Source of the DNA: Lytechinus pictus
Lineage: Eukaryota
Length of the DNA: 64,000 bases
Direction: 5' to 3'
NCBI RefSeq assembly: GCF_037042905.1
Contig: NC_087256.1
Coordinates: 3,968,001-4,032,000 of the forward strand
Part shown: positions 54 to 62,930 of the stretch, in pieces
How positions within the stretch are numbered: the stretch's first letter is position 1
Layout of the letters: each line of letters begins with the position of its first letter
Translations under genes and position numbers: made by a program
Notes under the pieces: model-generated
Databases searched by the model: none
Told to the model about the DNA's origin: nothing
Seen by the model: the letters and a program-made list of their open reading frames with translations, nothing else

Positions 54-2482
54 CTGCAGGGGCTGTGGAAGTTTATTCCACTTTTTGTAGCCGTGCTGAG
101 GCATGTCTATCTTCTTCTTCCCTCGTTCTTTCTTGCTCTTTTGATCTTTAGTTTTCTTCTTGCTCTCAGTGTGCCAAGATAAAGGATCTTGAGGGAAACT
201 CTTCCTTGTTGAGACCTGATACACGTTGCCAGAATCCAGGTAGAGATTTGAATCACCGGGCTGATGAATCAACTGTGCACCTGCGGTTTGGTGATGTAAT
301 AATGGGAATAGAATGGAGAGCATGTTATGTTTCAAAGTGAATATATTTAGACAGGATAAAATCATTCATGTTCTTCAATAGTCCACGGTTATGTGATTCC
401 TTTTATAAATTTATTTGTTATATGAATTTATGCCATCCTACGGTAACTTCTACGGAATCCTAGATAATAATTTCCAGTTAAACATTGTTATCATGAAAGG
501 TACCAATTGGCTGGCCGAGTAACTTTAATAGTAATTTCAATGAATGAAGTGAAGGTTTTTGAAATAAAATATGCAAGTATCACTCTGTAGCCTCTACTAC
601 ACATTGTCAAAAGTATACTGTCAGACCATAATACTTAACCTAATACATCTTACAAATGGTGCAGACATAAACTGAATCAATGAAAAGTTCTTCTCTATCT
701 TTCTTCTACTGTCCTAGTGTCCTACATTGCAAAAATTATCAAATGGTTAGAGTTTTTATTTATCCACAAACATAGAAATTTAAGAATGACTGTAAATGTA
801 ATATTTTTATCAAGTTGGACTCTCATCCTCATATGCAAAAACATATTTCAGTTTTAAAGGTGTGATGTAATCAGGGACTTCTAACACCGATAAACAGTAC
901 CTACCAAGCAACCATTCTTGCTCAAATTGGTTGTGTGTATCAAGCATCTTATCACCAATGGCTGGATTCATCACATCCTTGAGAGTAGGAGGTGGCTTGG
1001 GTTTACGACGGAATACTTGGATGTCTTGAGCAGTTGTGTTGATGGCACCTGCAAGAAAACATGCCATCATTAACCAATTTTTAATTCAATATAACGATGT
1101 ACTCAAATGTACAATTGCCCTGTATTTGTAATGACAATGACATAAAGGTTATCTTGATTATGAAATCCTATCTTATACAAACAAGATCATAGTGTCTGAA
1201 TTCCAAAAAAAAGATTGCATATTAGAAAGTTTGCATTCTTTGATCACAATTAGAAAAAGTTCAATGAAAAATAAGATTCTTGTTTCATCTTAAAATATAT
1301 GTAACAAGCAAAATGTGATTGTGGCTGACGTTTGGTGAATAGTAATCAGGAAGCAGGAACAGACAGTATCTTGATTTACACTAATTTACTCGAAAGGTAC
1401 ATAATAAAAATGTCAAGAGATTTAAGAGCTTTTTTTAATTCAATCTAAAAATTAAAAAAAAATTAATTAAATATGAGAGGATTACCGAGACTATCAATGG
1501 CAAGTTGTCTTTGTTTCCGTCTGACTCCACCAGGAAGACGATAGAATGATGCTAAAGGTTGTGTATTGATGTCTTCCTCATCATTTTCATCCTCACCACC
1601 TTCTCCTTCTTTCTTATCCTTGGCACTAGAACTTTTTCTACCCCCAGAAAGCACTGGTTTCTGTTTCTTTGAGGTTCTGCTATCTGCTCTTTGTTCTGTT
1701 GGCTCAGCTAGCCCAGTCTCACTCATGCTGGTGTCATCTCTGATAAGAGTATCAAGCTGTGAAGACTCTCCAAACTTCTCAACGAGAAGCTTGGTTAGTC
1801 TGTCCTTCTGTGGACCTTGAGGTGTTCGCTCGTTGACGATCCATCTAGCTGTCGCTTTGCTAAGGTTCATCAAGACATGAGAATCCCAATTCTGAGATTC
1901 TTTTGTTCTCGTCTTTGAATCATGCTGGGAATCTGTGTTGATCTCTACTTCCTCTTCTAATTCATTCTCTTGCTCTGTTTCAGTGAGGAATGCATTTTTC
2001 CCTTTGAGAACAGTTCCAGCTTCAGACACAATTTCATCATCTCTATCAGGAATTATCTTTTTCTTTTTGGGCTGGAGTGGCTTAAGCTTGTGTTCTGATA
2101 CGGTAGTGATGTGGCAAGGAGCATGTTTCTTTTCGTACCCACGCTGGTTATGCCTTCCAACAGTACCAATCTTTTTCAGTGGTTTCTTCTTCACAATTCC
2201 TTTGGAATCAAAAGTTCCTTTCAGATCTACCTTGTTGTATGGAAGTGTATGAGCTGCATGTTTGCGAATTACGGCTTCACTGAAGAGGAGATCAGCGCTT
2301 ATCTTCTTCACATAGTCATGATGGATTTTACCCTGTGCATCTTGGGTACGAGTTGGAGGTAAACTTTGTGACAGGAAGGAGAATTGGCTTTTGAGTTTTG
2401 ATTCATCAGACCCAACCTGTGGTACCTTTACTCTATCGGCACAGGGGAAGAGAAGTGGCCGAGACAGGCTGTCAGTCTCCAT
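54..2482 (-). CDS. HEATR4: HEAT repeat-containing protein 4-like, N-terminal exons (gene continues beyond the left edge)
   Basis: Exons 2510-1486 (ATG at 2482), 1048-905 and 280-54, all GT-AG and phase-compatible (phase 1). The peptides WDSHVLMNLSKATARWIV, PLASFYRLP, HNQFEQEWLLGAQLIHQPG and GYKKWNKLPQP recall, in the same order, the N-terminal region of vertebrate HEATR4 (recognised from memory, not searched). Confidence 0.75.
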
Positions 2483-4228
2483 CACCAATCCTCAAGCTTT
2501 ACCAAGACTTCTAGATAAAGAAAAGAAAAGCAAATAAGTATTTATAAGTAAAACCATAAACAGTATTTGACCTTTCTTGCACTCAAACCTTTTACTAGTT
2601 TACTGCAGGAATTAACAATACAATAAAAACTAAACTTACAATTTTAGTGAAAACCTGAATTTCATGAGAACAAGGATAACCAAGGATACCAAGAAAAAAT
2701 ATCAAAGAAAAGCGGGTAAAAACAGCAAAAGATAAAGAAAGAAGACAAAAAGAAAAGACAAGGTCAGGGAAGAAAAAAAATAAAATAAAATACAGATCTT
2801 GTTATAGAAAAACAATGCCACCATTTCTGGGGTCTACATGTATATGATAAGTTGCCCAAAGTCTGCACATACACGTATCTGCGCCATTCTAATAAAAGAA
2901 GATACACAATGATTGCAAACTTTACACCTGAAATACATACAGATATTCATTAAAAAATCTGACTCAAAATGGTGGAGAAATATTGAATTTCAGGCATATC
3001 ATGTGACGGCCTCAAATTGCAGCTTTTCTCATTGAAAACCCTGAATCATGGGGCATCATCTTTTTGTTCAATCTGAAAATGACTAGCCAAAATATTTTCT
3101 TTGAAAATCGTATATTTCTCTCAACTTTTTATGACATTTTTTGCACACTTACTCATAAGAATATAAAGAACATTAATTGAAAATTTTTGTGGAATAAAAA
3201 ATAAATTCATGTTTAATCTTAAGTTAAATTTTGGTGCACAAACCTAACTTTAACTTTGCCCCCCCCCCCTTTATACAGTATTGATATTTTTTTAATCAGT
3301 TGAATTACACATAAATTAAAACAAAAGTCAAAGAAATAAAAGAAAAGATTGTGTAATTGTAAATTAGAATAGATCTAATTTCCTGCAGCCTTCAATCTAG
3401 CAACAAGCTGAACACCAACGAAACGTCAACTTCAAATCTTCACAACCAATGCCATGGAAAATAAGTGGATGAACAATTGAATGATGAATGAATGAGAAAA
3501 GTTAGTATTAAAGACTCAAAAGTCAAATCCACTAACATTAATATTTAATAACAGCTGCACCTTCTACTTTTTTGCATTGCATTAGACTAGCCTAGGGCCT
3601 AGACAAAACACTAATCTATACGTAGGGTGTCTGAAGCCACACTGAAAAGTGTCGGCATAAAACAGGCTGATTTAGGGGAAAATATGGCACATTTTTTCGG
3701 GGAAGTTCAGGCTACTAGAAAAATGTGATCTGAATTGATTATCAACTTGTGTTTGGCATGTATGGAAAGAGAAAATTCAGGGGCTTCTTTTGACAGTAAG
3801 GACAAGTTTATATGATCATTTTAAATAAGGATTTAGAGATAAATTGCAAACCCTTATTTTTGTGTGTGGTGAGATTGCCATTTCTCCATGCGTTTTCTAT
3901 GGGAAAATGAAATTTCTGTTTTGCACAATTTTTTCACTTTGTCGCAATTTTTCATTGTGATCTGGTTTCCAAATCTTTATAAAAATCATACCATCAGATA
4001 GAGCATAAAAACTCCTATTGGACTCTTTATGGACAAGTTTTTGGCATTAATAATAAATTTATAACAGCTCTCGGAAGCTAAAAATTTGGATTTGTGTGTG
4101 TCCATTTCTTAACTAGGGCCTACAGTCTATGGCAGAGAAATGCTGAAAATTGACCTAATTTCATTCTTCTTTTTTGCAGCCAATAATTGGATTTTTTTCA
4201 AAAATGTTACATTTCTGTCAGTCTGAAG

Positions 4229-5107
4229 CACTCCTAGTACCAATGAGGTCCAAACATTAACATGTATGGACCTCATAGGCGACAATGCGTTAAAAACAGG
4301 TTAGAACTTCTAAACGTACTGTTTCCTGCACCCAAGTATGATATTACTCCCAAAATATGAGTTTTGTCCTCGTTTGTTTATCATTTATTAAAAGATTGCC
4401 CATTAAATATATTCCTATTCCTAATTTGAATTTAATAAAATAAAGGGAAACTTACATTTGAGTCATTTTTCGATCTTTTTTTGGCAGTCAGTCCGGTCAC
4501 CGTCGAGTGCGATCAAAGCGGTATGAAGCTGATTTTCAGATCACGTGATACGTGTGGTCATCACCTGATCAATCGACTATCCTTTTTTAAAGACCGCAAC
4601 AATTATAAATTTTATTATAAAATATATATAGAATGAATAATTGCATGATATTATATATATTTCTACAATTAAAAATATTTTGTGATATGAATTTAATATT
4701 TGACGTAAAAATCGCTATTTAACAAAATATTTATTTAAAATAAAAAATCAAACAAAATAAAAACGCCTTGGACACAGTGCAAAAAACCTAACAATTTGGC
4801 CGCGTTCTTAACAACTATCGTAAGGGGCGCTCTATTTATAAATAAAGTTGCATATGTAGTTGTCTACCGCGACAGGAACAGCCGCAGAATTGAAGCCAGA
4901 AGCGTGGGAAATTGCCAGAAAATTCAAGAAAAGAACCGGTGAGTACCGATTTAACAGTACTAATTTATTAAGTAACATTTATTGAATCATTACAAGATTT
5001 ATTTTTTAGTAAAACAAAGCTTAGTTCTAAGCTAGGGCGGCCCAAATGCGCGTGAGTGGAGTCCCAGTTTATTAGCACGGGTAAGTATTGGGGTGTCGCC
5101 TAGAGTG
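4229..5107 (+). mobile_element. 879-bp non-autonomous element, copy A (CACTC...GAGTG ends, 8-bp TSD)
   Basis: TSD GTCTGAAG at 4221-4228 and 5108-5115; homologous along its length to copy B. Confidence 0.85.
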
Positions 5108-5156
5108 GTCTGAAGGTCGTTTCTCTTCAAATTCAGAAAGAAAATGTGATATTTTC

Positions 5157-6033
5157 CACTCTAGGCGACACCCCAATACTTACCCGTGCTAATAAACTGG
5201 GACTCCACTCACGCGCGTTTGGGCCTCCCTAGCTTAGAACTAAGCACTAATTTCACCTTAAAAACTAAATCTACAAGGTATGTATAATCTATTTATAAAT
5301 TTAATAATGTTTAATCGGTACTCACCGGTTCTTTTGTTGCATTTTCAGACCATTTCTCACAATTCTTCGTAAATATTTGCGGCAAATTTTGTCGCCATAG
5401 ACAGCTTAGCGTCCATCTTTATTGATAAATGGAGCGCCCTTTACGATAGTTGTTAATGCCGCGGAGAAATCGTTAGGCATTTTGGCCTGTGTTCAAGGCG
5501 TTCTTTCTGTTTTATTTTTATATTGAAGATTGTGCATTTGTTGAATAGCGCCGTCTACGTCAGGTATGAGATCGAATGTATAAATACACTCTTCCAAAAT
5601 AATTATGATTCCGACCTGGCGCTGTTTAACTTCAATCTCTTTCACCTAAATTAGCGATGAATGCTAGCATTATAAAATATATATTATTAACGTCTGACGA
5701 AAAGAATAACCAACCGATCAGCTGACGAGAACGCGAATCACGTGATCTTCATATCAGCTTCGATCGCGAGTCAGAAGAGAGGAGCAGTTGCCCAGAAAAT
5801 CAGGAAAAAGCCGTGAAAATGTAAGTTCCCCTTCATTTCTTTCAATTTTTTTTATTGCTAACAATGTATTCAATTAGTGAGATCGAAATGTAATGATTAG
5901 ACAGTACGATAGCTTGTAGTTTTGATAAAATACAAAAATAATCATCTTCACAAAGATTTCTGACACAAAATACTACTGATGTCGCCTATGAGGTCCATAC
6001 ATGTAATGTTGGACCTCATTGGTACTAGGAGTG
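5157..6033 (-). mobile_element. 877-bp non-autonomous element, copy B (diverged relative of copy A, opposite orientation)
   Basis: TSD ATATTTTC at 5149-5156 and 6034-6041; ends near-identical to copy A. Confidence 0.85.
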
Positions 6034-6541
6034 ATATTTTCTTGAAATAAGAAAAAAAAAAATTTCTCCAGACACCCTACTATACGCCCGAATTGGGCGA
6101 GGTGATTACACAGGCATGCCCGCACTAACACACTACCGTCGGTGAATGGGGATTATAGTAAAGAATTTTCAGAATGTCACTTATTGTCAGAAATTGTTAA
6201 ATAAATCCCCAGAAACGACGGTTATCCGAACCCTTTTCACTCCTAACATCATTCTGAATGTGTGGGACTCGGCAAATCAGGACGCTGACAGTGACAGTGA
6301 TGCAGACAAATGCAACATTTTAACGCGTGTGAAAACCTATTGATGAATAGATCGACAGAATACTACAAACTCTACCATTAATTTCCCATCCTGATTAGAT
6401 ATTACCGATATGATACCGAGAAATTCATAAATAAACTCACCGAATTATGTCTGTTTGCGTCTTGTTTCCATGGACAAATTTTGAATGTAGGAGAAAGAAA
6501 TACCGTGATTTGAGACCGATAGTACGGTATCTCTGAGGTAT

Positions 6542-7124
6542 AGACCTTATCGCAAATAGCGTCTGTCGCGTGAGGGCGTCTGTCATCGCAGAGGATCACG
6601 GGATGCGAAAGGGGGCAAACGCGGAATCGGCTTTCGGGAAGCCATACAACGCCATATGTTTTGTGTAGTGTCACTCAAAATCCAGGCTTTTTTTAAGTCT
6701 GATTTCTTCGTATTTAAATTATTTTGGATACTTGAATGTAGATTTATAGAACAATCTTTGTATCATGATTGCCCAGTGAAAGTATGAACTCAATACTCAC
6801 CGTATTTTCGAAGTTTTCTGGGGCTAAACTTGGGAAGATTTTGTGGGAAAAGTGAGACGGTGATTGCGGGTCATTGCCGATCGTCTTTAGAAAAGAGCAC
6901 GTCGATCGGTGATCCAAATTAGATAGCATATTTTTCCATTAAAGAATATTCATGAGAAACATAATGTAGACCATATATCTCCATATAAATTTAGCTAGCC
7001 AAGTTTTTTGTTATTTTGGGGGAAATATAGTCCTTTTTTTGCAAGTCGGGCTGTTTAGTTTGATCATACAATTTCTATATAGGGGCCGGGTGCATGAGAC
7101 AAATCTAAAGCCAAAAATAAGCTA

Positions 7125-7206
<82 letters not shown>

Positions 7207-26343: not shown

Positions 26344-27882
26344 TCATAATCGGTACCCTTTGATTCTGTGATTGGCTCCGTCCACGACCAAGGCAGTTGC
26401 CTGGTCATCGTCGATGGCGATGCCCCGGATATAGTTGAATTCACAAAGTTCTCCAAAGTTTCCTAGGTAATCTCCTGACGCGCTGAACACCATAACCGTT
26501 TCTTTGTTATACATACACCACGAGTCTGTCCGCCTACAGGTCACGTAGATATTATCAAGACGATCCAGAGCAAGACCGCGACAGTGCCATCTCTTTCCAC
26601 AGAGATCTGGTGAGATTAAAAGAAGAGACTTTTTGGAATGTGGATCGAAGATTTGAATCCTACAGTTGTTCCTGTCCGCAACCACAAGGTTACCTTTAGA
26701 GTTGATCTTGATGAACCAGGGATAACTGACAGCACCATCTAGATTTCCAGGATAAGCAATGGTAAAGAGCTGTTGCGCGTGACGGTTGAAGACACGGACG
26801 TTGCTTTCTTTCGCGTCCGCAACGTAAACGTGTTCGATGTCGAGGGCGATCCCTGTCGGTGATGGCCCTACCTTCGCCCAGAGACGCAGTTTCGCCGTTG
26901 TCCTCACGAATTGCAGTACGCATTTATTTGCATCGTCTGTCACATAATATGCGCCTGGATCGCCCGCAATTGCAAACGGTCCGATTCTTTTCAGCCCTTT
27001 AGGTGGAGTTGAACCAAACTCCATTTGGACAACTCCTTCGCGATCGGTTACGATTATTCGGTGATTGCCCTTGTCAGTAATGACGTACTGGCCTCCTGTA
27101 AGGAATATGTCATGAGGGTTTTTAAATTTTGACATCCCTCGTAAATCAAACACTTTCCCGCCACTTGGTTTAACCAGGATGTAAGCAATGATGTGTTCTT
27201 TCGAGTTGTCCGAGACTGGAATATCAACCTCGTACTTACCAACGCTCTGTGGAACAAACACTTTCTCGAAGGAATGTGTGAGATCATTGATTCCTAACGA
27301 CTGTGGTCGATACGGGAGGAGCTCAATTTCCTTTAGCTCACCATCAGGAAATAGAATTGTTCCTCTGACGTATGTGTTGCTTTTCGGAATGATAATTTTC
27401 CCGTCCTGATCACATAGTCTGAGTGTGATGGTGACGCGTTTGTTGACCATGGGGTCGTTTGAGATGGTTAGCTTAGACGCATTCACATCAAGCTCCTTGT
27501 TGATCTTCATTGACTCCCGACGTCTGATAGGAGACAAAGCAGCGGTGCTTCCACCATGGCTGCTCAAACTGCTCGATCGGCTTCTCGGGTCATCGCTGAT
27601 GGAGGGACTTCTACTCAACTCACACCTTGATTCCGCCTTGAACTGTGCTTCCTCCAGTTCTTTCTGTTCTGGCTCAAACGGGGATGTCTTCTGACATACA
27701 GGGCAAGTGATGTGTGGCCTTCGGAACTTCCTGCTCGCTGTTGCAATGGCGTACAGACATTCATGACAAGCTGCATGGCCACATGGTAAATTGTAGGCAT
27801 CCTGGATCGTGTCAAGGTGCAGTGGACACCGGTCATCGGGGGTGTTACTGGCCAAAGAACTCTCCGTACTCAGCTTCCTCAT
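26344..27882 (-). CDS. Intronless RING - filamin-like - NHL repeat protein (TRIM-NHL related), 512 aa
   Basis: RING-like CPLH..LPCGHAACHEC..CPVC; filamin/Ig-like segment (ITLRLCDQDG...FVPQSVGKYEVDI); NHL repeats (FKNPHDI..VITDKGNHRI, YPWFIKINSKGNLVVADRNNCRIQIF, RGLALDRLDNIYV, VVDGANHRI). A probable 5' UTR acceptor lies at ~27909. Confidence 0.9.
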   Translation of the reverse strand: MRKLSTESSLASNTPDDRCPLHLDTIQDAYNLPCGHAACHECLYAIATASRKFRRPHITCPVCQKTSPFEPEQKELEEAQFKAESRCELSRSPSISDDPRSRSSSLSSHGGSTAALSPIRRRESMKINKELDVNASKLTISNDPMVNKRVTITLRLCDQDGKIIIPKSNTYVRGTILFPDGELKEIELLPYRPQSLGINDLTHSFEKVFVPQSVGKYEVDIPVSDNSKEHIIAYILVKPSGGKVFDLRGMSKFKNPHDIFLTGGQYVITDKGNHRIIVTDREGVVQMEFGSTPPKGLKRIGPFAIAGDPGAYYVTDDANKCVLQFVRTTAKLRLWAKVGPSPTGIALDIEHVYVADAKESNVRVFNRHAQQLFTIAYPGNLDGAVSYPWFIKINSKGNLVVADRNNCRIQIFDPHSKKSLLLISPDLCGKRWHCRGLALDRLDNIYVTCRRTDSWCMYNKETVMVFSASGDYLGNFGELCEFNYIRGIAIDDDQATALVVDGANHRIKGYRL

Positions 27883-42287: not shown

Positions 42288-42449
42288 TAGGAGATAGCGC
42301 GAACGCAGATCTCCGCTACCATAAATTATACGCCCGAGTTCCCCACGTTTGGGGGAATCGCAAGGTTCAGCAAGCCGGAGTGCAATGGCAAGCCTCGCCC
42401 TGGGGGTGCATCCTTCTTGATCAATGCGACCCCTGCGCCAGGTAAGTAT
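42288..42449 (-). ncRNA. U1: U1 spliceosomal snRNA
   Basis: Minus strand reads ATACTTACCTGGCGCAGGGG...GATCAAGAAG (70K loop)...CCATTGCACTCCGG (U1A loop)...AATTTATGG (Sm site)...GGAGATCTGCGTTCGCGCTATCTCC (stem-loop IV); full length. Confidence 0.97.
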
Positions 42450-46113: not shown

Positions 46114-48417
46114 ATGGACACGACGACTGAATCAACGACGGAAGTGTGGGGGAGTGGTGATAACGAAACAAGCACATTAATTGATGAAGGAAACTTTACA
46201 ACCATTAATGTGACGTTATGGAACGTAACGACCGTAACGGGTATTTCGTCGAATGTATCAAGTACGACGGTGACGCAATTTGTCACCCTGTCGACAACAG
46301 ATGAAGGGTTGAGTACGACCAAGTTGGATGCTCCGACTACTAGTGCGATCGTGCAACCGTCATCGGAAGCGTACACGGACAGTGATTTGAGGATCTTTGC
46401 TGGTGTCTTGATGATCATCATTACCGCCTTGGCTTTGATCGGAAACCTTGGAGTCATCGCTGGTTTACGACATAAATGCTTTCACGGTCGAGCACTTTAC
46501 ACCTTCTTGAACAACCTTGCCATCACAGTCCTGTGTGATTGCCTCTTCAATGCTCCTTTCATCATAGGAGCGATGCTCTCTGACGGTAGAGTATGGCTGG
46601 ATTCTACTTTTCTATGTAACGTTACTTCTTTCATCGGTAATTTGATACATACCCAGATTATCCTAAGTCTGATGCTACTAGTCTTGGACAGGATGCTGTC
46701 CTTGAAATACTCGGATAGTTACATCAGGAAGACTGTTGGGGTGAGAGCTAACTTGATATCTGGATACGCATGGGTCCATTCAATGGCTTTTACCCTGGCT
46801 ATCGTCGTCACGTCCGTTGAGAGTGACTATTTCGAAGACAGGTATCTTTGCTCTGTCGAGTACAAAAACAACTTAGCATACAACGTTATATATTCATTAT
46901 TATGCAACATAGCTCCTTGGGTGACAATAATGTGTTGCTATATCTACATTGTGGCATTAGCGTCTGAAGCAAACGCAAGGGATAATGTTTTAGCTGAAGC
47001 AGGGTATGGCGAACTGACTGGACCCATTGGACAAGCTACAGAACTTAATCACGCGAAACCAGTAGGTGTTTTGATATTTTTGTGGTGTTTGCTAATAGGG
47101 CCATTTCATATTTTAGGAATGATCTATGTGTACTCTGGGGTAACGATGATCCCTGGGGTGGTATGGACAATCTTCACATGCTTAAGATTTATCTATGATT
47201 TCTTGGTTCCGGTGGTCATTCTGGTCGCCTGGCCAGAATCCTGGAAAGAATGCAAACACTTTATCGCATGTCGTCGGGAAAATGCAATAACAGAGAACGG
47301 CCTTCGGAACCGTATCCCAGGAGTTCGTTCTTCATGGGCCGAAGGAAGTGATGGATCTGTAACCGATAGGTCAACACTTGACAGATCGACACTCAGCAGA
47401 TCGTTCAATGTTCCTGTACTGTTTCCAACGTCCAATGGGCTACAGCTTCAGGTCAGTTCTAGAGGAAGTAAGGATGGTGGAGACATCGAGGTTGCAGACT
47501 TCGCGTCTGAAGAAAAATTACGAGGCAGCAGGCGTCCTCCACCTTACCTCCCACCACTCTTTAGCGTCGTGCAAAGTAGCGAGGAAGATAGTTTTAATAC
47601 AGACAGTAGCATGCCTTTGAAAGGAGAAGACAATGGCCTGTTTGATCTTAATGAATCGGCCGATAGCAAAACTGCAATATCACAATTTCAGTTGTCTTTG
47701 GGGAGGGCGGAAGATTTTCATGCTCTGAAGTCTACGACGCCCGGAAGTGACGCGAAGGTGTCACCACGGAATGAACGGGAATTTGGAGAAGCGCATAAGG
47801 AATACTCCCCAAGACATTACCAAAAATATTCACAAGGAGATGGTAAAACCAACCCTAGTTTTACTAGCCCTGCTCCCCAGCAAGTTGGAAGGCAAAAGAA
47901 AAACAGTACTTCCAAAAGAGACCTTCCCTCGAATGAAATAAAACCTTCTGAGAAATCTTCAGATAGTAATTTGCAAGGAAGGGCGAGACGAGTGAGCAAA
48001 GGTGAAACTATTTCAACAAATACCTCATCACCGATCAGGGAACAAAACCAAATAACATCAAATGGAAAAGAGCGATCTAAGAAAGGAGCCGTTACTAGCG
48101 GAAACAACGCTAATAATATCACTGGTAGAGACGATGATGGACTCGGGGGCAACTCAAGAAGAGTATCATCAGAGAAAGGCGTTGCCGATGGGGACAAGGG
48201 AGGAGGAGGTGGAGGGGCAAACGGGACCAGCAGTAGCAAAGGAGGGCGGCGCGTCAGTAGTACAGGTAATGGAGTTGGACGTGGTCTTAGGAGCAGGGAG
48301 GAGTCAGAAAAGAGACAAAGACATTCCAGTGGGAAGAGTATACATAGTAATTCATCAAGTCCAAGAGATAATGGCTCATCTTCTAAGGCACAGGAGGGCT
48401 CAGGAAGATCGAAGTGA
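46114..48417 (+). CDS. Intronless orphan class A (rhodopsin-like) GPCR, 767 aa
   Basis: S/T-rich N-terminus with several N-x-S/T sites, seven hydrophobic segments, TM1 GN, TM3 Cys and DRM, TM4 Trp, ECL2 Cys, long low-complexity C-tail. Confidence 0.9.
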   Translation: MDTTTESTTEVWGSGDNETSTLIDEGNFTTINVTLWNVTTVTGISSNVSSTTVTQFVTLSTTDEGLSTTKLDAPTTSAIVQPSSEAYTDSDLRIFAGVLMIIITALALIGNLGVIAGLRHKCFHGRALYTFLNNLAITVLCDCLFNAPFIIGAMLSDGRVWLDSTFLCNVTSFIGNLIHTQIILSLMLLVLDRMLSLKYSDSYIRKTVGVRANLISGYAWVHSMAFTLAIVVTSVESDYFEDRYLCSVEYKNNLAYNVIYSLLCNIAPWVTIMCCYIYIVALASEANARDNVLAEAGYGELTGPIGQATELNHAKPVGVLIFLWCLLIGPFHILGMIYVYSGVTMIPGVVWTIFTCLRFIYDFLVPVVILVAWPESWKECKHFIACRRENAITENGLRNRIPGVRSSWAEGSDGSVTDRSTLDRSTLSRSFNVPVLFPTSNGLQLQVSSRGSKDGGDIEVADFASEEKLRGSRRPPPYLPPLFSVVQSSEEDSFNTDSSMPLKGEDNGLFDLNESADSKTAISQFQLSLGRAEDFHALKSTTPGSDAKVSPRNEREFGEAHKEYSPRHYQKYSQGDGKTNPSFTSPAPQQVGRQKKNSTSKRDLPSNEIKPSEKSSDSNLQGRARRVSKGETISTNTSSPIREQNQITSNGKERSKKGAVTSGNNANNITGRDDDGLGGNSRRVSSEKGVADGDKGGGGGGANGTSSSKGGRRVSSTGNGVGRGLRSREESEKRQRHSSGKSIHSNSSSPRDNGSSSKAQEGSGRSK

Positions 48418-55332: not shown

Positions 55333-55507
55333 NNNNNNNNNNNNNNNNNNNNNNNNNNNNNNNNNNNNNNNNNNNNNNNNNNNNNNNNNNNNNNNNNNNN
55401 NNNNNNNNNNNNNNNNNNNNNNNNNNNNNNNNNNNNNNNNNNNNNNNNNNNNNNNNNNNNNNNNNNNNNNNNNNNNNNNNNNNNNNNNNNNNNNNNNNNN
55501 NNNNNNN
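55333..55507. other. N gap within a (CAT)n tract
   Basis: Run of N. Confidence 0.99.
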
Positions 55508-61613: not shown

Positions 61614-62930
61614 TCATGGAAACTCATCAATTCCTTGTTCACCATGAGGTTGGAGTCCTCTCTCTAAAAGTTTCTTATTCCGTGTCTTCTCTTCCTCTTG
61701 ATTCTTTAGCTGTTCTGCTCTTTGTGCTTCAAGGATCTCATCAATAGAAACTTCCTCCAAATTGTGATTATTCTCATTCTCTGTATCCTGAAATATATGA
61801 ATAAAGGAATAAAATTTATGTTATAATTCATCATAACATCATCATCATAATCATGATCTCCAGTTCACCAACACTATCACCCCCCCCCCCAATCATCATG
61901 ACATCATCGCCAACATCATCATCACTTTGCCATTANNNNNNNNNNNNNNNNNNNNNNNNNNNNNNNNNNNNNNNNNNNNNNNNNNNNNNNNNNNNNNNNN
62001 NNNNNNNNNNNNNNNNNNNNNNNNNNNNNNNNNNNNNNNNNNNNNNNNNNNNNNNNNNNNNNNNNNNNNNNNNNNNNNNNNNNNNNNTACTGCCATTCAT
62101 CATGATTACCAGTCTCCATCACCACCACCACCACCATCATCACCATCATCATCATTATCATCATCATATGCATTATCATCAACAACGATATCACCAAATT
62201 TTGGTTTAAAAATAGTGAGATAACTTACTACTTCACCAAGAAGGACCACATTCTCTCCTCTGACAACAAAAACACCTCTTGGTATGTCTCCATACTGTTT
62301 GCCTACATGTATCCTCTCAATGGTACGATGTAACACAAGATTGGCTGCCAAGATAAGAAGAGATACCACAAAAGAAAGTTAATTTCAATGTGTATATGAT
62401 TTGAAAAATTGAAATGTCTAAGGCTATTTTCTTAGATGATAGTTTACTATTTTTTTTTAATTGAGAGTAGGAAAATGAAGAATGTAATAAAGTAGAGTTG
62501 AAGTAGAAAAATGAGAAGGTGGATGAGTAAACAAGGAGGGAGGAGAAGGAGGGTAAGAAAATGAGGAACCAAGGAGGGAAGGAAGGAGGGTAGAAGAAGA
62601 ATATTCTTCTACATATTATGCAGCAGGCATAATAATATTCTTCTTCATATTATGCAGCAGGTGAATGAGCAAAGTGGTTCAAAGTTACAAACATGTGGTA
62701 AAAGGGATCATGATAATGCACAAGATAGTTTCATAAACTATAAAAAGCATGAATACTTTGCAAACCAATCTTTACTTGACAGTTTATTAAAAAAATAAAA
62801 TGCCTTGATAATTGTATAAAATTATAAAGTCAGACGTCCACAAGAATTGACTTATACTTACCGAATTGATCAATACTTCTAAGAATACCTATCAGGGTCC
62901 TTCCATCTCTTAGGACAACCAGAAGCTTTT
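61614..62930 (-). CDS. LSM1: Sm-like protein LSm1, last three coding exons (first exon not found in the window)
   Basis: Exons 62930-62862 (KLLVVLRDGRTLIGILRSIDQF), 62344-62229 (ANLVLHRTIERIHVGKQYGDIPRGVFVVRGENVVLLGEV) and 61787-61614 (DTENE...VSIDEILEAQRAEQ...EFP*); phases fit. Confidence 0.95.
61936..62087. other. N gap within a (CAT/CAC)n tract in an LSM1 intron
   Basis: Run of N. Confidence 0.99.

What the first reader, a model, noticed from the sequence alone, without database searches (positions are those of the whole stretch)
4221..6041. An apparent 1.8-kb palindrome is two independent, oppositely oriented insertions of an unclassified ~878-bp element
Seen: 4229-5107 is flanked by GTCTGAAG on both sides and 5157-6033 by ATATTTTC on both sides, so each arm has its own 8-bp TSD. 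The outer ~55 bp and inner ~90 bp are near-identical between copies, while the interiors match only in blocks. The lengths are still 879 and 877 bp. Inference: two old subfamilies of one non-autonomous family landed 49 bp apart. Length and motif conservation despite spacer turnover points to constraint on the element itself. An 8-bp TSD with only a 5-bp perfect TIR (CACTC) fits poorly with typical hAT, P or Merlin MITEs. Zisupton/KDZ is a candidate superfamily, but this is a guess.
Basis: partly seen in the sequence, partly recalled or inferred. Interest (0 to 1): 0.8.

Follow-up and report, generated by a model that had tools for sequence, protein, structure and literature searches.

The report
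Twin transposon insertions in sea urchin
The 1.8-kb "palindrome" is two separate, recent insertions of related ~880-bp non-coding jumping genes, head-to-head inside an older jumping gene in the sea urchin Lytechinus pictus; this is an ordinary kind of event, from a family I could not assign to a known superfamily.

Summary
Copy L (4229-5107, 879 bp) is flanked by GTCTGAAG twice. Copy R (5157-6033, 877 bp, inverted) is flanked by ATATTTTC twice. Of all CACTC...GAGTG pairs in the 64-kb window, only these two have matching 8-bp flanks. The copies are about 64-68% identical overall, but 51/56 at one end and 88/90 at the other.

The window is Lytechinus pictus chromosome CM073237.1. Both copies lie 33 bp apart inside an older ~685-bp hAT-like MITE (3623-6079). 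That MITE is CpG-depleted (o/e 0.32) while the two copies are not (1.26 and 1.23), so they are recent arrivals.

Best reading: two independent insertions of diverged subfamilies of one non-autonomous cut-and-paste family, moved in trans by a transposase that makes 8-bp staggered cuts. The superfamily is unresolved (P-like, hAT or KDZ). The closest described precedent is BuT5, a P-superfamily MITE of about 1 kb with 3-bp TIRs, 8-9-bp TSDs, conserved ends and size, and a ~67% identical interior.

Four conserved, outward-pointing GTRAGT motifs and TATA/AATAAA-like blocks allow a "mobile promoter/first-exon" reading. This is untested. No further copies, autonomous partner or empty site could be retrieved. 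The scan had noted CACTC elements elsewhere in this genome.

The parts
4229..5107 (+). Copy L of the CACTC element (879 bp), orientation End1 to End2. No ORF longer than 52 aa.
5157..6033 (-). Copy R of the CACTC element (877 bp), inverted relative to L. A different subfamily, about 64-68% identical overall.
4221..4228 (.). Left copy of L's 8-bp target-site duplication GTCTGAAG; the right copy is at 5108-5115.
5108..5115 (.). Right copy of L's TSD GTCTGAAG.
5116..5148 (.). 33 bp of original target DNA, part of the outer MITE, between the two target sites.
5149..5156 (.). Left copy of R's 8-bp TSD ATATTTTC; the right copy is at 6034-6041.
6034..6041 (.). Right copy of R's TSD ATATTTTC.
4229..4284 (+). 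End1 (56 bp, 51/56 identical to R 6033-5980). It consists of the tip CACTC, an 18-bp-stem hairpin at 4240-4279 (DNA fold -13.9 kcal/mol, z -5.7), then TAGGCGACA at 4276-4284.
5019..5107 (+). End2 (about 90 bp, 98% identical to R 5245-5157). It holds a GCTTAG/CTAAGC mini-hairpin, GTGAGT at 5052-5057 and GTAAGT at 5081-5086. The terminal 14 nt, read from the tip, are CACTC+TAGGCGACA.
4939..4944 (+). Conserved GTGAGT inside the block AAAAGAACCGGTGAGTACCGATT. It could be a 5' splice-site-like motif or a transposase-site-like motif, and it points towards End2.
4450..4455 (-). Conserved GTAAGT on the minus strand inside the block AAATGTAAGTTYCCCTT, pointing towards End1.
4806..4847 (+). Most conserved interior block, TTAACAACTATCGTAAGGGGCGCTCTATTTATAAATAAAG. 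It is TATA-like and also contains AATAAA (4841-4846), so it is ambiguous between a promoter and a poly(A) signal.
4525..4570 (.). Conserved block (37/46) containing the perfect 10-bp palindrome ATCACGTGAT (E-box core) at 4540-4549.
3623..6079 (.). Older host element, about 685 bp once the two insertions are removed. Ends are TAGGGTGTCTGAAG and, on the reverse strand, TAGGGTGTCTGGAG. It is flanked by CTATACG on both sides and has CpG o/e 0.32.

Best explanation
These are two separate, recent insertions of two diverged subfamilies of one non-autonomous (non-coding) cut-and-paste DNA transposon family of Lytechinus pictus. They sit head-to-head (End2 facing End2), with target sites 33 bp apart, inside an older hAT-like MITE. 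That MITE probably lies in the 5' intron or promoter region of a minus-strand gene. Shown: each copy was integrated by a reaction that duplicated 8 bp of target. Inferred: the enzyme is a DDE/RNase-H-type transposase supplied in trans by an autonomous relative that shares the ~57-bp and ~90-bp asymmetric ends. Those ends carry a 5-bp TIR, CACTC, plus an inverted TAGGCGACA motif. The motif directly follows CACTC at End2 but lies 42 bp further in at End1, beyond a hairpin. The ends stay nearly identical because they are needed for recognition, while the interior drifts. The superfamily is unresolved; my rough odds are P-like 35%, hAT 35%, KDZ/Zisupton, MULE or other 30%. The palindrome is a by-product of the two insertions, not a unit.
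For: Both copies have perfect 8-bp TSDs, and these are the only CACTC...GAGTG pairs in 64 kb with such flanks. The composite has no TSD. Removing each copy plus one TSD restores a continuous ~685-bp element with its own 14-bp TIR (13/14) and a 7-bp flanking repeat. The ends are 91-98% identical against an interior of about 57%, Fisher p = 5e-22. This excludes in-situ duplication followed by neutral decay. The conserved blocks are collinear. There is no ORF above 52 aa, no Rfam family other than a hairpin artefact, and no tRNA. CpG o/e is 1.26 and 1.23 in the copies against 0.32 in the host MITE and 0.26-0.5 in the flanks, so the copies are young insertions. A described precedent with the same architecture exists: BuT5 and its divergent P element (PMC3698922). 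An unchecked scan note reports other CACTC elements on another chromosome of this genome.
Against: Only two copies could be examined. No autonomous partner, empty site or copy-number estimate could be obtained. The 5-bp TIR is short. CACTC violates the hAT YARNG consensus, and the P 'CANRG' consensus as I recall it. Interior blocks, four conserved GTRAGT motifs and CpG o/e above 1 in both diverged copies suggest a constraint that a plain 'only the ends matter' MITE model does not predict. Two related elements landing 33 bp apart may need an insertion preference, such as homing or promoter-proximal targeting, which I could not test.
Confidence: 0.85

Rival explanations
1. The element is more than a passive MITE. 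Its interior is a mobile bidirectional promoter with two outward-facing first exons and splice donors, a natural promoter or exon-donating cassette kept by selection. It could create chimeric transcripts with host exons. This adds to the transposon reading rather than replacing it.
For: There are four GTRAGT hexamers per copy: L 4939, 5052 and 5081 on the plus strand, and 4455-4450 on the minus strand. All are conserved between copies that differ at about 36% of aligned columns, and all point away from the centre. The window background is 0.0005 per nt per strand, so about 0.9 are expected per element. AT-rich TATA-like blocks lie roughly 30 bp upstream of conserved blocks in both directions. 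The conservation pattern is high at the 'core promoter', low in the 'exon', high at the 'donor', low in the 'intron' and high at the end, on both sides. CpG o/e is above 1.2 in both diverged copies, as in unmethylated promoters. Two first-stage notes reached the same reading independently (s1-320082, s1-323457), but both are unchecked.
Against: There is no transcript evidence of any kind. GTRAGT could equally be the core of a subterminal transposase-binding motif: three sites lie in direct orientation within 170 bp of End2, two of them inside the terminal 55 bp that must serve transposition. The 'TATA' block also contains a conserved AATAAA, so it is ambiguous. The 'exons' have no conserved ORF. 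Only n = 2 copies, and the motifs were chosen post hoc. Invertebrate TEs are often unmethylated anyway.
Confidence: 0.12
2. The 1.8-kb structure is one unit. It is either a foldback transposon or an inverted duplication (palindrome) formed in place, with later gene conversion keeping parts of the arms identical.
For: The inner 90-bp arms are 98% complementary with a 47-nt loop, and palindrome centres are prone to arm-to-arm conversion. Foldback forms of other transposons exist in this genome according to a scan note (s1-306781).
Against: The pair has no common TSD, while each arm has its own perfect 8-bp TSD, one copy of each lying in the spacer. The outermost 56 bp, 1.7 kb apart, are also near-identical, with the identity stopping exactly at the element tips. 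Conversion from the palindrome centre does not explain that. The interiors are only about 57% identical.
Confidence: 0.03
3. The family belongs to Zisupton/KDZ.
For: Zisupton makes 8-bp TSDs. The KDZ member Kyakuja has CA..TG termini without TIRs and 7-bp TSDs (PMC12730594). The elements here have CA...TG termini, an 8-bp TSD and almost no TIR.
Against: The same features fit P (BuT5 and its master: 3-bp TIR, 8-9-bp TSD; PMC3698922) and, apart from the TIR consensus, hAT. No KDZ transposase was linked to these ends. Both P and hAT are, to my knowledge, commoner in animals.
Confidence: 0.12

Closest known systems
BuT5 MITE and its divergent P-element master (Drosophila repleta group; PMC3698922)
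   Same: A non-coding element of about 1 kb with a very short TIR (3 bp there, 5 bp here) plus an imperfect inner inverted motif. TSDs are 8-9 bp. Size is conserved. Terminal 32-65 bp are ~91% identical while overall identity between lineages is 67%; here the figures are 91-98% and about 64-68%.
   Different: No P-type master was found here. The Drosophila THAP-site 8-mers are not enriched: 2 within one mismatch per copy against about 2 expected, and only TGAGTGGA is conserved. End1 carries an 18-bp-stem hairpin. The host is an echinoderm.
hAT non-autonomous elements (Ds-like or hAT MITEs)
   Same: An 8-bp TSD, short TIRs, asymmetric ends and nesting of elements within elements. L's TSD GTCTGAAG fits the Ac-type target pattern nTnnnnAn (pattern from my own knowledge).
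   Different: The terminus CACTC does not fit the hAT YARNG consensus at positions 3 and 5. R's TSD fits only half of the target pattern. There are no arrays of subterminal short repeats.
Zisupton/KDZ transposons
   Same: An 8-bp TSD (Zisupton) and CA..TG termini without TIRs (Kyakuja) (PMC12730594).
   Different: The type Zisupton has long TIRs (from my own knowledge). No transposase evidence was found here.
Double insertions such as double-Ds in maize or the two inverted P elements of singed-weak in Drosophila (my own knowledge)
   Same: Two related non-autonomous elements sit in inverted orientation at or next to the same site, forming a palindrome.
   Different: Here the two copies come from diverged subfamilies, with separate target sites 33 bp apart. 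No evidence of chromosome breakage or instability is available.

Membership tests
Cut-and-paste (TIR-order) DNA transposon, non-autonomous | Fixed-length target-site duplication flanking each copy | tested here: met
   Perfect 8-bp TSDs on both copies, unique among all CACTC/GAGTG pairs in the window.
Cut-and-paste (TIR-order) DNA transposon, non-autonomous | Terminal inverted repeats | tested here: inconclusive
   Only 5 bp are perfect (CACTC). An inverted 9-bp TAGGCGACA lies at unequal distances from the tips. The local alignment score of the ends is not above shuffles: 10 against 9.2 +/- 1.6.
Cut-and-paste (TIR-order) DNA transposon, non-autonomous | Multiple dispersed copies, and an autonomous relative with the same ends | not testable with these tools
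   There are two copies in the window. No tool searches the sea urchin genome by DNA. Metagenome scans, ORF look-ups and protein searches were all empty. An unchecked scan note reports more copies.
hAT superfamily | 8-bp TSD | tested here: met
hAT superfamily | TIR starting with YARNG (consensus recalled from the literature) | tested here: not met
   CACTC has C instead of R at position 3 and C instead of G at position 5.
hAT superfamily | hAT transposase (BED, DDE and hATC dimerisation domains) in the autonomous copy | not testable with these tools
   No autonomous copy was found.
P superfamily | 7-9-bp TSD | tested here: met
   8 bp. The range comes from PMC3698922.
P superfamily | THAP-domain binding sites near both ends | tested here: inconclusive
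   Matches to the Drosophila sites TAAGTGTA, TAAGTGGA and TAAGGGTT are at chance level. One conserved near-match, TGAGTGGA, lies 46 bp from End2. THAP specificities differ between families.
P superfamily | THAP + DDE transposase in the autonomous copy | not testable with these tools
   No autonomous copy was found.
Zisupton/KDZ | 8-bp TSD | tested here: met
   PMC12730594.
Zisupton/KDZ | KDZ transposase in the autonomous copy | not testable with these tools
   No autonomous copy was found.
CACTA/CMC and Transib (CAC... termini) | 2-5-bp TSD | tested here: not met
   The TSD is exactly 8 bp for L; the 9th base and the preceding base differ. The range comes from PMC12730594.
Foldback element or single palindromic unit | One TSD around the whole inverted pair | tested here: not met
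   The outer flanks are GTCTGAAG and ATATTTTC.

The most novel reading that the evidence does not exclude
The CACTC family is a mobile bidirectional promoter and first-exon cassette. In this reading, a non-coding DNA transposon has kept its interior (TATA-like cores, an E-box/CRE-like centre and outward-facing 5' splice sites at both ends) under selection across old subfamilies. It would scatter ready-made alternative promoters and leader exons near sea urchin genes.
Probability: 0.1. Interest if true: 0.7.

Novelty: new member of a known kind. Interest (0 to 1): 0.25.

Why it matters
As it stands, this is routine repeat annotation. It explains an eye-catching palindrome as nested transposon insertions and documents an uncatalogued short-TIR, 8-bp-TSD family in a sea urchin used for transgenesis. 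It would matter more in two cases. One is if the family proves young and active, which the perfect TSDs and undecayed CpGs hint at. The other is if its conserved interior really drives outward transcription and splicing. L. pictus would then offer an experimentally tractable case of a transposon spreading promoters and first exons.

Tried and rejected
- **More copies in the window.** Relaxed BLASTN of both copies found only AT-rich noise. End 23-mers with up to 3 mismatches matched only the two copies.
- **Metagenome scans with both ends.** The first returned nothing. The second returned one 20-mer hit with no similarity beyond the 20 bases, so it is a chance match.
- **Fetching copies through ORFs of the element.** Exact look-ups of the 36- and 33-aa ORFs found nothing on record. 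A word-indexed search with an alignment of the End2 peptides found no candidate. An exhaustive HMMER search of the 48-aa ORF against 1.84 billion representatives gave 0 hits.
- **Empty-site test through the neighbouring gene.** The 341- and 339-aa ORFs are not on record. Their best homologue, P0001 (76% identity), lies on an ENA contig whose DNA could not be delivered.
- **Structured RNA or tRNA origin.** Rfam gave only a 'mir-16' hit at 5061-5203. It scores 38.3 bits, just above that family's 36.5-bit gathering score, but spans the End2/End2 hairpin and the spacer, so I treat it as a by-product of the palindrome. Aragorn found nothing.
- **Organism identification.** I first misread GCA_037042905.1 as Holothuria scabra from a paper's reference list. 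It is Lytechinus pictus. The H. scabra repeat figures are not used.
- **Other element classes rejected.** CACTA/Transib is rejected on TSD length. A solo LTR is rejected because the termini are CA..TG rather than TG..CA and the TSD is 8 bp. Helitron and IS200-like elements make no TSDs. Penelope is unlikely because no hammerhead ribozyme hit was found.
- **Drosophila THAP sites.** They occur at chance level.
- **Zisupton termini.** The original Zisupton paper is not held in the library.
Full report
**What is there**

- Copy L spans 4229-5107 (879 bp). It begins CACTCCTAGTACC and ends GTCGCCTAGAGTG, and GTCTGAAG lies on both sides (4221-4228 and 5108-5115).
- Copy R spans 5157-6033 (877 bp). 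It is the same kind of element in inverted orientation, with ATATTTTC on both sides (5149-5156 and 6034-6041).
- As a control, I scanned every CACTC...GAGTG pair 60-12,000 bp apart in the 64-kb window. Only these two have identical 8-bp flanks, and none has a one-mismatch flank.
- For L the repeat is exactly 8 bp. For R a ninth base (G) is ambiguous between the element and the TSD.
- 23-mers from either end occur nowhere else in the window, with 0 expected by chance.

**How alike the copies are**

- The two copies align collinearly over their whole length, at 576/906 columns and 67.6% by BLASTN.
- Identity is very uneven. End1 is 51/56 identical and End2 is 88/90 (98% complementary as an inverted repeat). 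The interior is about 57% identical, with short islands of conservation.
- Ends against interior differ with Fisher p = 5e-22.
- Distances between the conserved islands differ by -14, -10, -1, +24, -1 and 0 bp. The near-equal lengths therefore result from compensating indels. With two copies this cannot be called a length constraint.

**Organism and context**

- Two intact single-exon ORFs of the window are a GPCR (46114-48417) and a TRIM-NHL protein (26344-27882). Both are on record on CM073237.1 of assembly GCA_037042905.1.
- I first misattributed that accession to Holothuria scabra. The citing paper uses it for Lytechinus pictus. Follow-up notes of the scan also name L. pictus.
- The window corresponds to about 3,968,001-4,032,000 of that chromosome.
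- Both copies lie inside an older element at 3623-6079. Its ends are TAGGGTGTCTGAAG and the reverse complement of TAGGGTGTCTGGAG, and CTATACG flanks it on both sides.
- Removing each CACTC copy plus one TSD leaves a continuous 685-bp hAT-like MITE. The two target sites were 33 bp apart.
- About 1.1 kb to the left of that MITE, a minus-strand coding exon starts behind a strong acceptor (...ctttatctag|AAGTC, ATG at 2482).
- To the right, 6100-6900 is CpG-rich. The elements therefore probably lie in that gene's 5' intron or promoter region. This is an inference.

**Age**

CpG observed/expected is 1.26 in L and 1.23 in R. It is 0.32 in the host MITE, 0.26-0.5 in the left flank and 0.70 for the window. 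Together with the perfect TSDs and near-identical ends, this indicates that both copies arrived recently in a long CpG-depleted context. The alternative is that they are kept unmethylated.

**What it is**

- Neither copy has an ORF above 52 aa. There is no tRNA.
- There is no credible Rfam family. The 'mir-16' hit at 5061-5203 scores 38.3 bits, just above that family's 36.5-bit gathering score. It spans the hairpin made by the two facing End2 arms plus the spacer, so I read it as a by-product of the palindrome.
- Each arm has its own TSD and the pair has none. This rules out a single foldback unit.
- Identity that is high at both the inner and the outermost ends, and that stops at the tips, rules out an in-situ inverted duplication with decay or centre-out gene conversion.
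- The best reading is two independent insertions of two diverged subfamilies of a non-autonomous cut-and-paste family. It would be mobilised in trans by a transposase that makes 8-bp staggered cuts, with selection at the element level keeping the ends.

**Anatomy of the ends**

- The perfect TIR is only CACTC.
- End2's terminal 14 nt, read from the tip, are CACTC+TAGGCGACA. At End1 the tip is CACTC and TAGGCGACA follows 42 nt further in (4276-4284). Between them lies an 18-bp-stem hairpin (4240-4279; -13.9 kcal/mol, z = -5.7).
- No subterminal arrays of short repeats were found.

**Superfamily**

- The 8-bp TSD excludes CACTA/CMC and Transib despite the CAC terminus. It is compatible with hAT, P and Zisupton/KDZ (PMC12730594).
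- CACTC does not fit the hAT YARNG consensus. That consensus is recalled from the literature, not tested against a database.
These have 3-bp TIRs plus imperfect sub-TIRs and 8-9-bp TSDs. BuT5 is about 1 kb with constant size, ~91% identical termini and 67.3% overall identity between species (PMC3698922). That is essentially the pattern seen here.
- Drosophila THAP-site 8-mers are not enriched, which is uninformative for a distant family.
- Without an autonomous copy the superfamily stays open.

**The interior**

- Conserved islands include a block with the perfect palindrome ATCACGTGAT (4540-4549). Another is the block TTAACAACTATCGTAAGGGGCGCTCTATTTATAAATAAAG (4806-4847), which is TATA-like but also contains AATAAA.
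- There are four GTRAGT hexamers: 4939, 5052 and 5081 on the plus strand and 4455-4450 on the minus strand. All are conserved in R and all point outward. About 0.9 are expected per element from the window frequency.
- Two first-stage notes read this as a mobile bidirectional promoter with outward first exons (s1-320082, s1-323457).
- That reading is possible, and the CpG richness of both diverged copies fits it.
- The same hexamers could instead be cores of transposase-binding sites, since three lie within 170 bp of End2 and two of those inside the terminal 55 bp.
- There is no transcript evidence, the sample is two copies, and the motifs were picked after the fact. I give the reading about 10-12%.

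**What could not be done**

- No tool searches the sea urchin genome by DNA.
- Metagenome scans, exact ORF look-ups, a word-indexed protein search and an exhaustive HMMER search yielded no further copy.
No empty site was seen.
- Copy number, TSD consensus, autonomous partner, clustering and transcription remain open.

**Verdict**

However, this is an ordinary nested-transposon situation with a good published precedent. It is a new, as yet unclassified family rather than a new kind of element.

Noticed in passing
window 3623-6079: An older ~685-bp MITE with hAT-like ends: TAGGGTGTCTGAAG and, on the reverse strand, TAGGGTGTCTGGAG (13/14). CTATACG flanks it on both sides (7 bp, or 8 bp with one mismatch). 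CpG o/e is 0.32. It is the landing site of both CACTC copies. No other copy is in the window.
   Followed up: partly
window 1466-2509 (-) and 6100-6900: A minus-strand coding exon of about 339 aa. The protein is low-complexity and K/E-rich, with no Pfam hit. It sits behind a strong splice acceptor. A CpG-rich block lies about 3.6 kb upstream, with minus-strand CGGTGAGT donor-like sites near 6441 and 6801. The elements probably lie in this gene's first intron or promoter region. The best homologue is P0001 (76% identity, ENA contig; DNA not available).
   Followed up: partly
window 42288-42449 (-): A full-length U1 spliceosomal snRNA gene (Rfam RF00003, 147 bits, E = 1.6e-37).
   Followed up: no
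window 5061-5203: An Rfam 'mir-16' hit of 38.3 bits, just above that family's 36.5-bit gathering score. It spans the hairpin formed by the two facing End2 arms plus the 49-nt spacer, so it is not evidence for a miRNA. If transcribed, the 90-bp inverted arms could form a hairpin RNA.
   Followed up: partly
window 26344-27882 (-) and 46114-48417 (+): Intact single-exon genes: a RING/TRIM-NHL protein (512 aa) and a rhodopsin-family GPCR (767 aa). Both are on record in the L. pictus assembly.
   Followed up: partly
window 7128-7200: A (TA)n microsatellite of about 70 bp.
   Followed up: no
window 55333-55507 and 61936-62087: Two runs of N (175 and 152 bases), left untouched.
   Followed up: no
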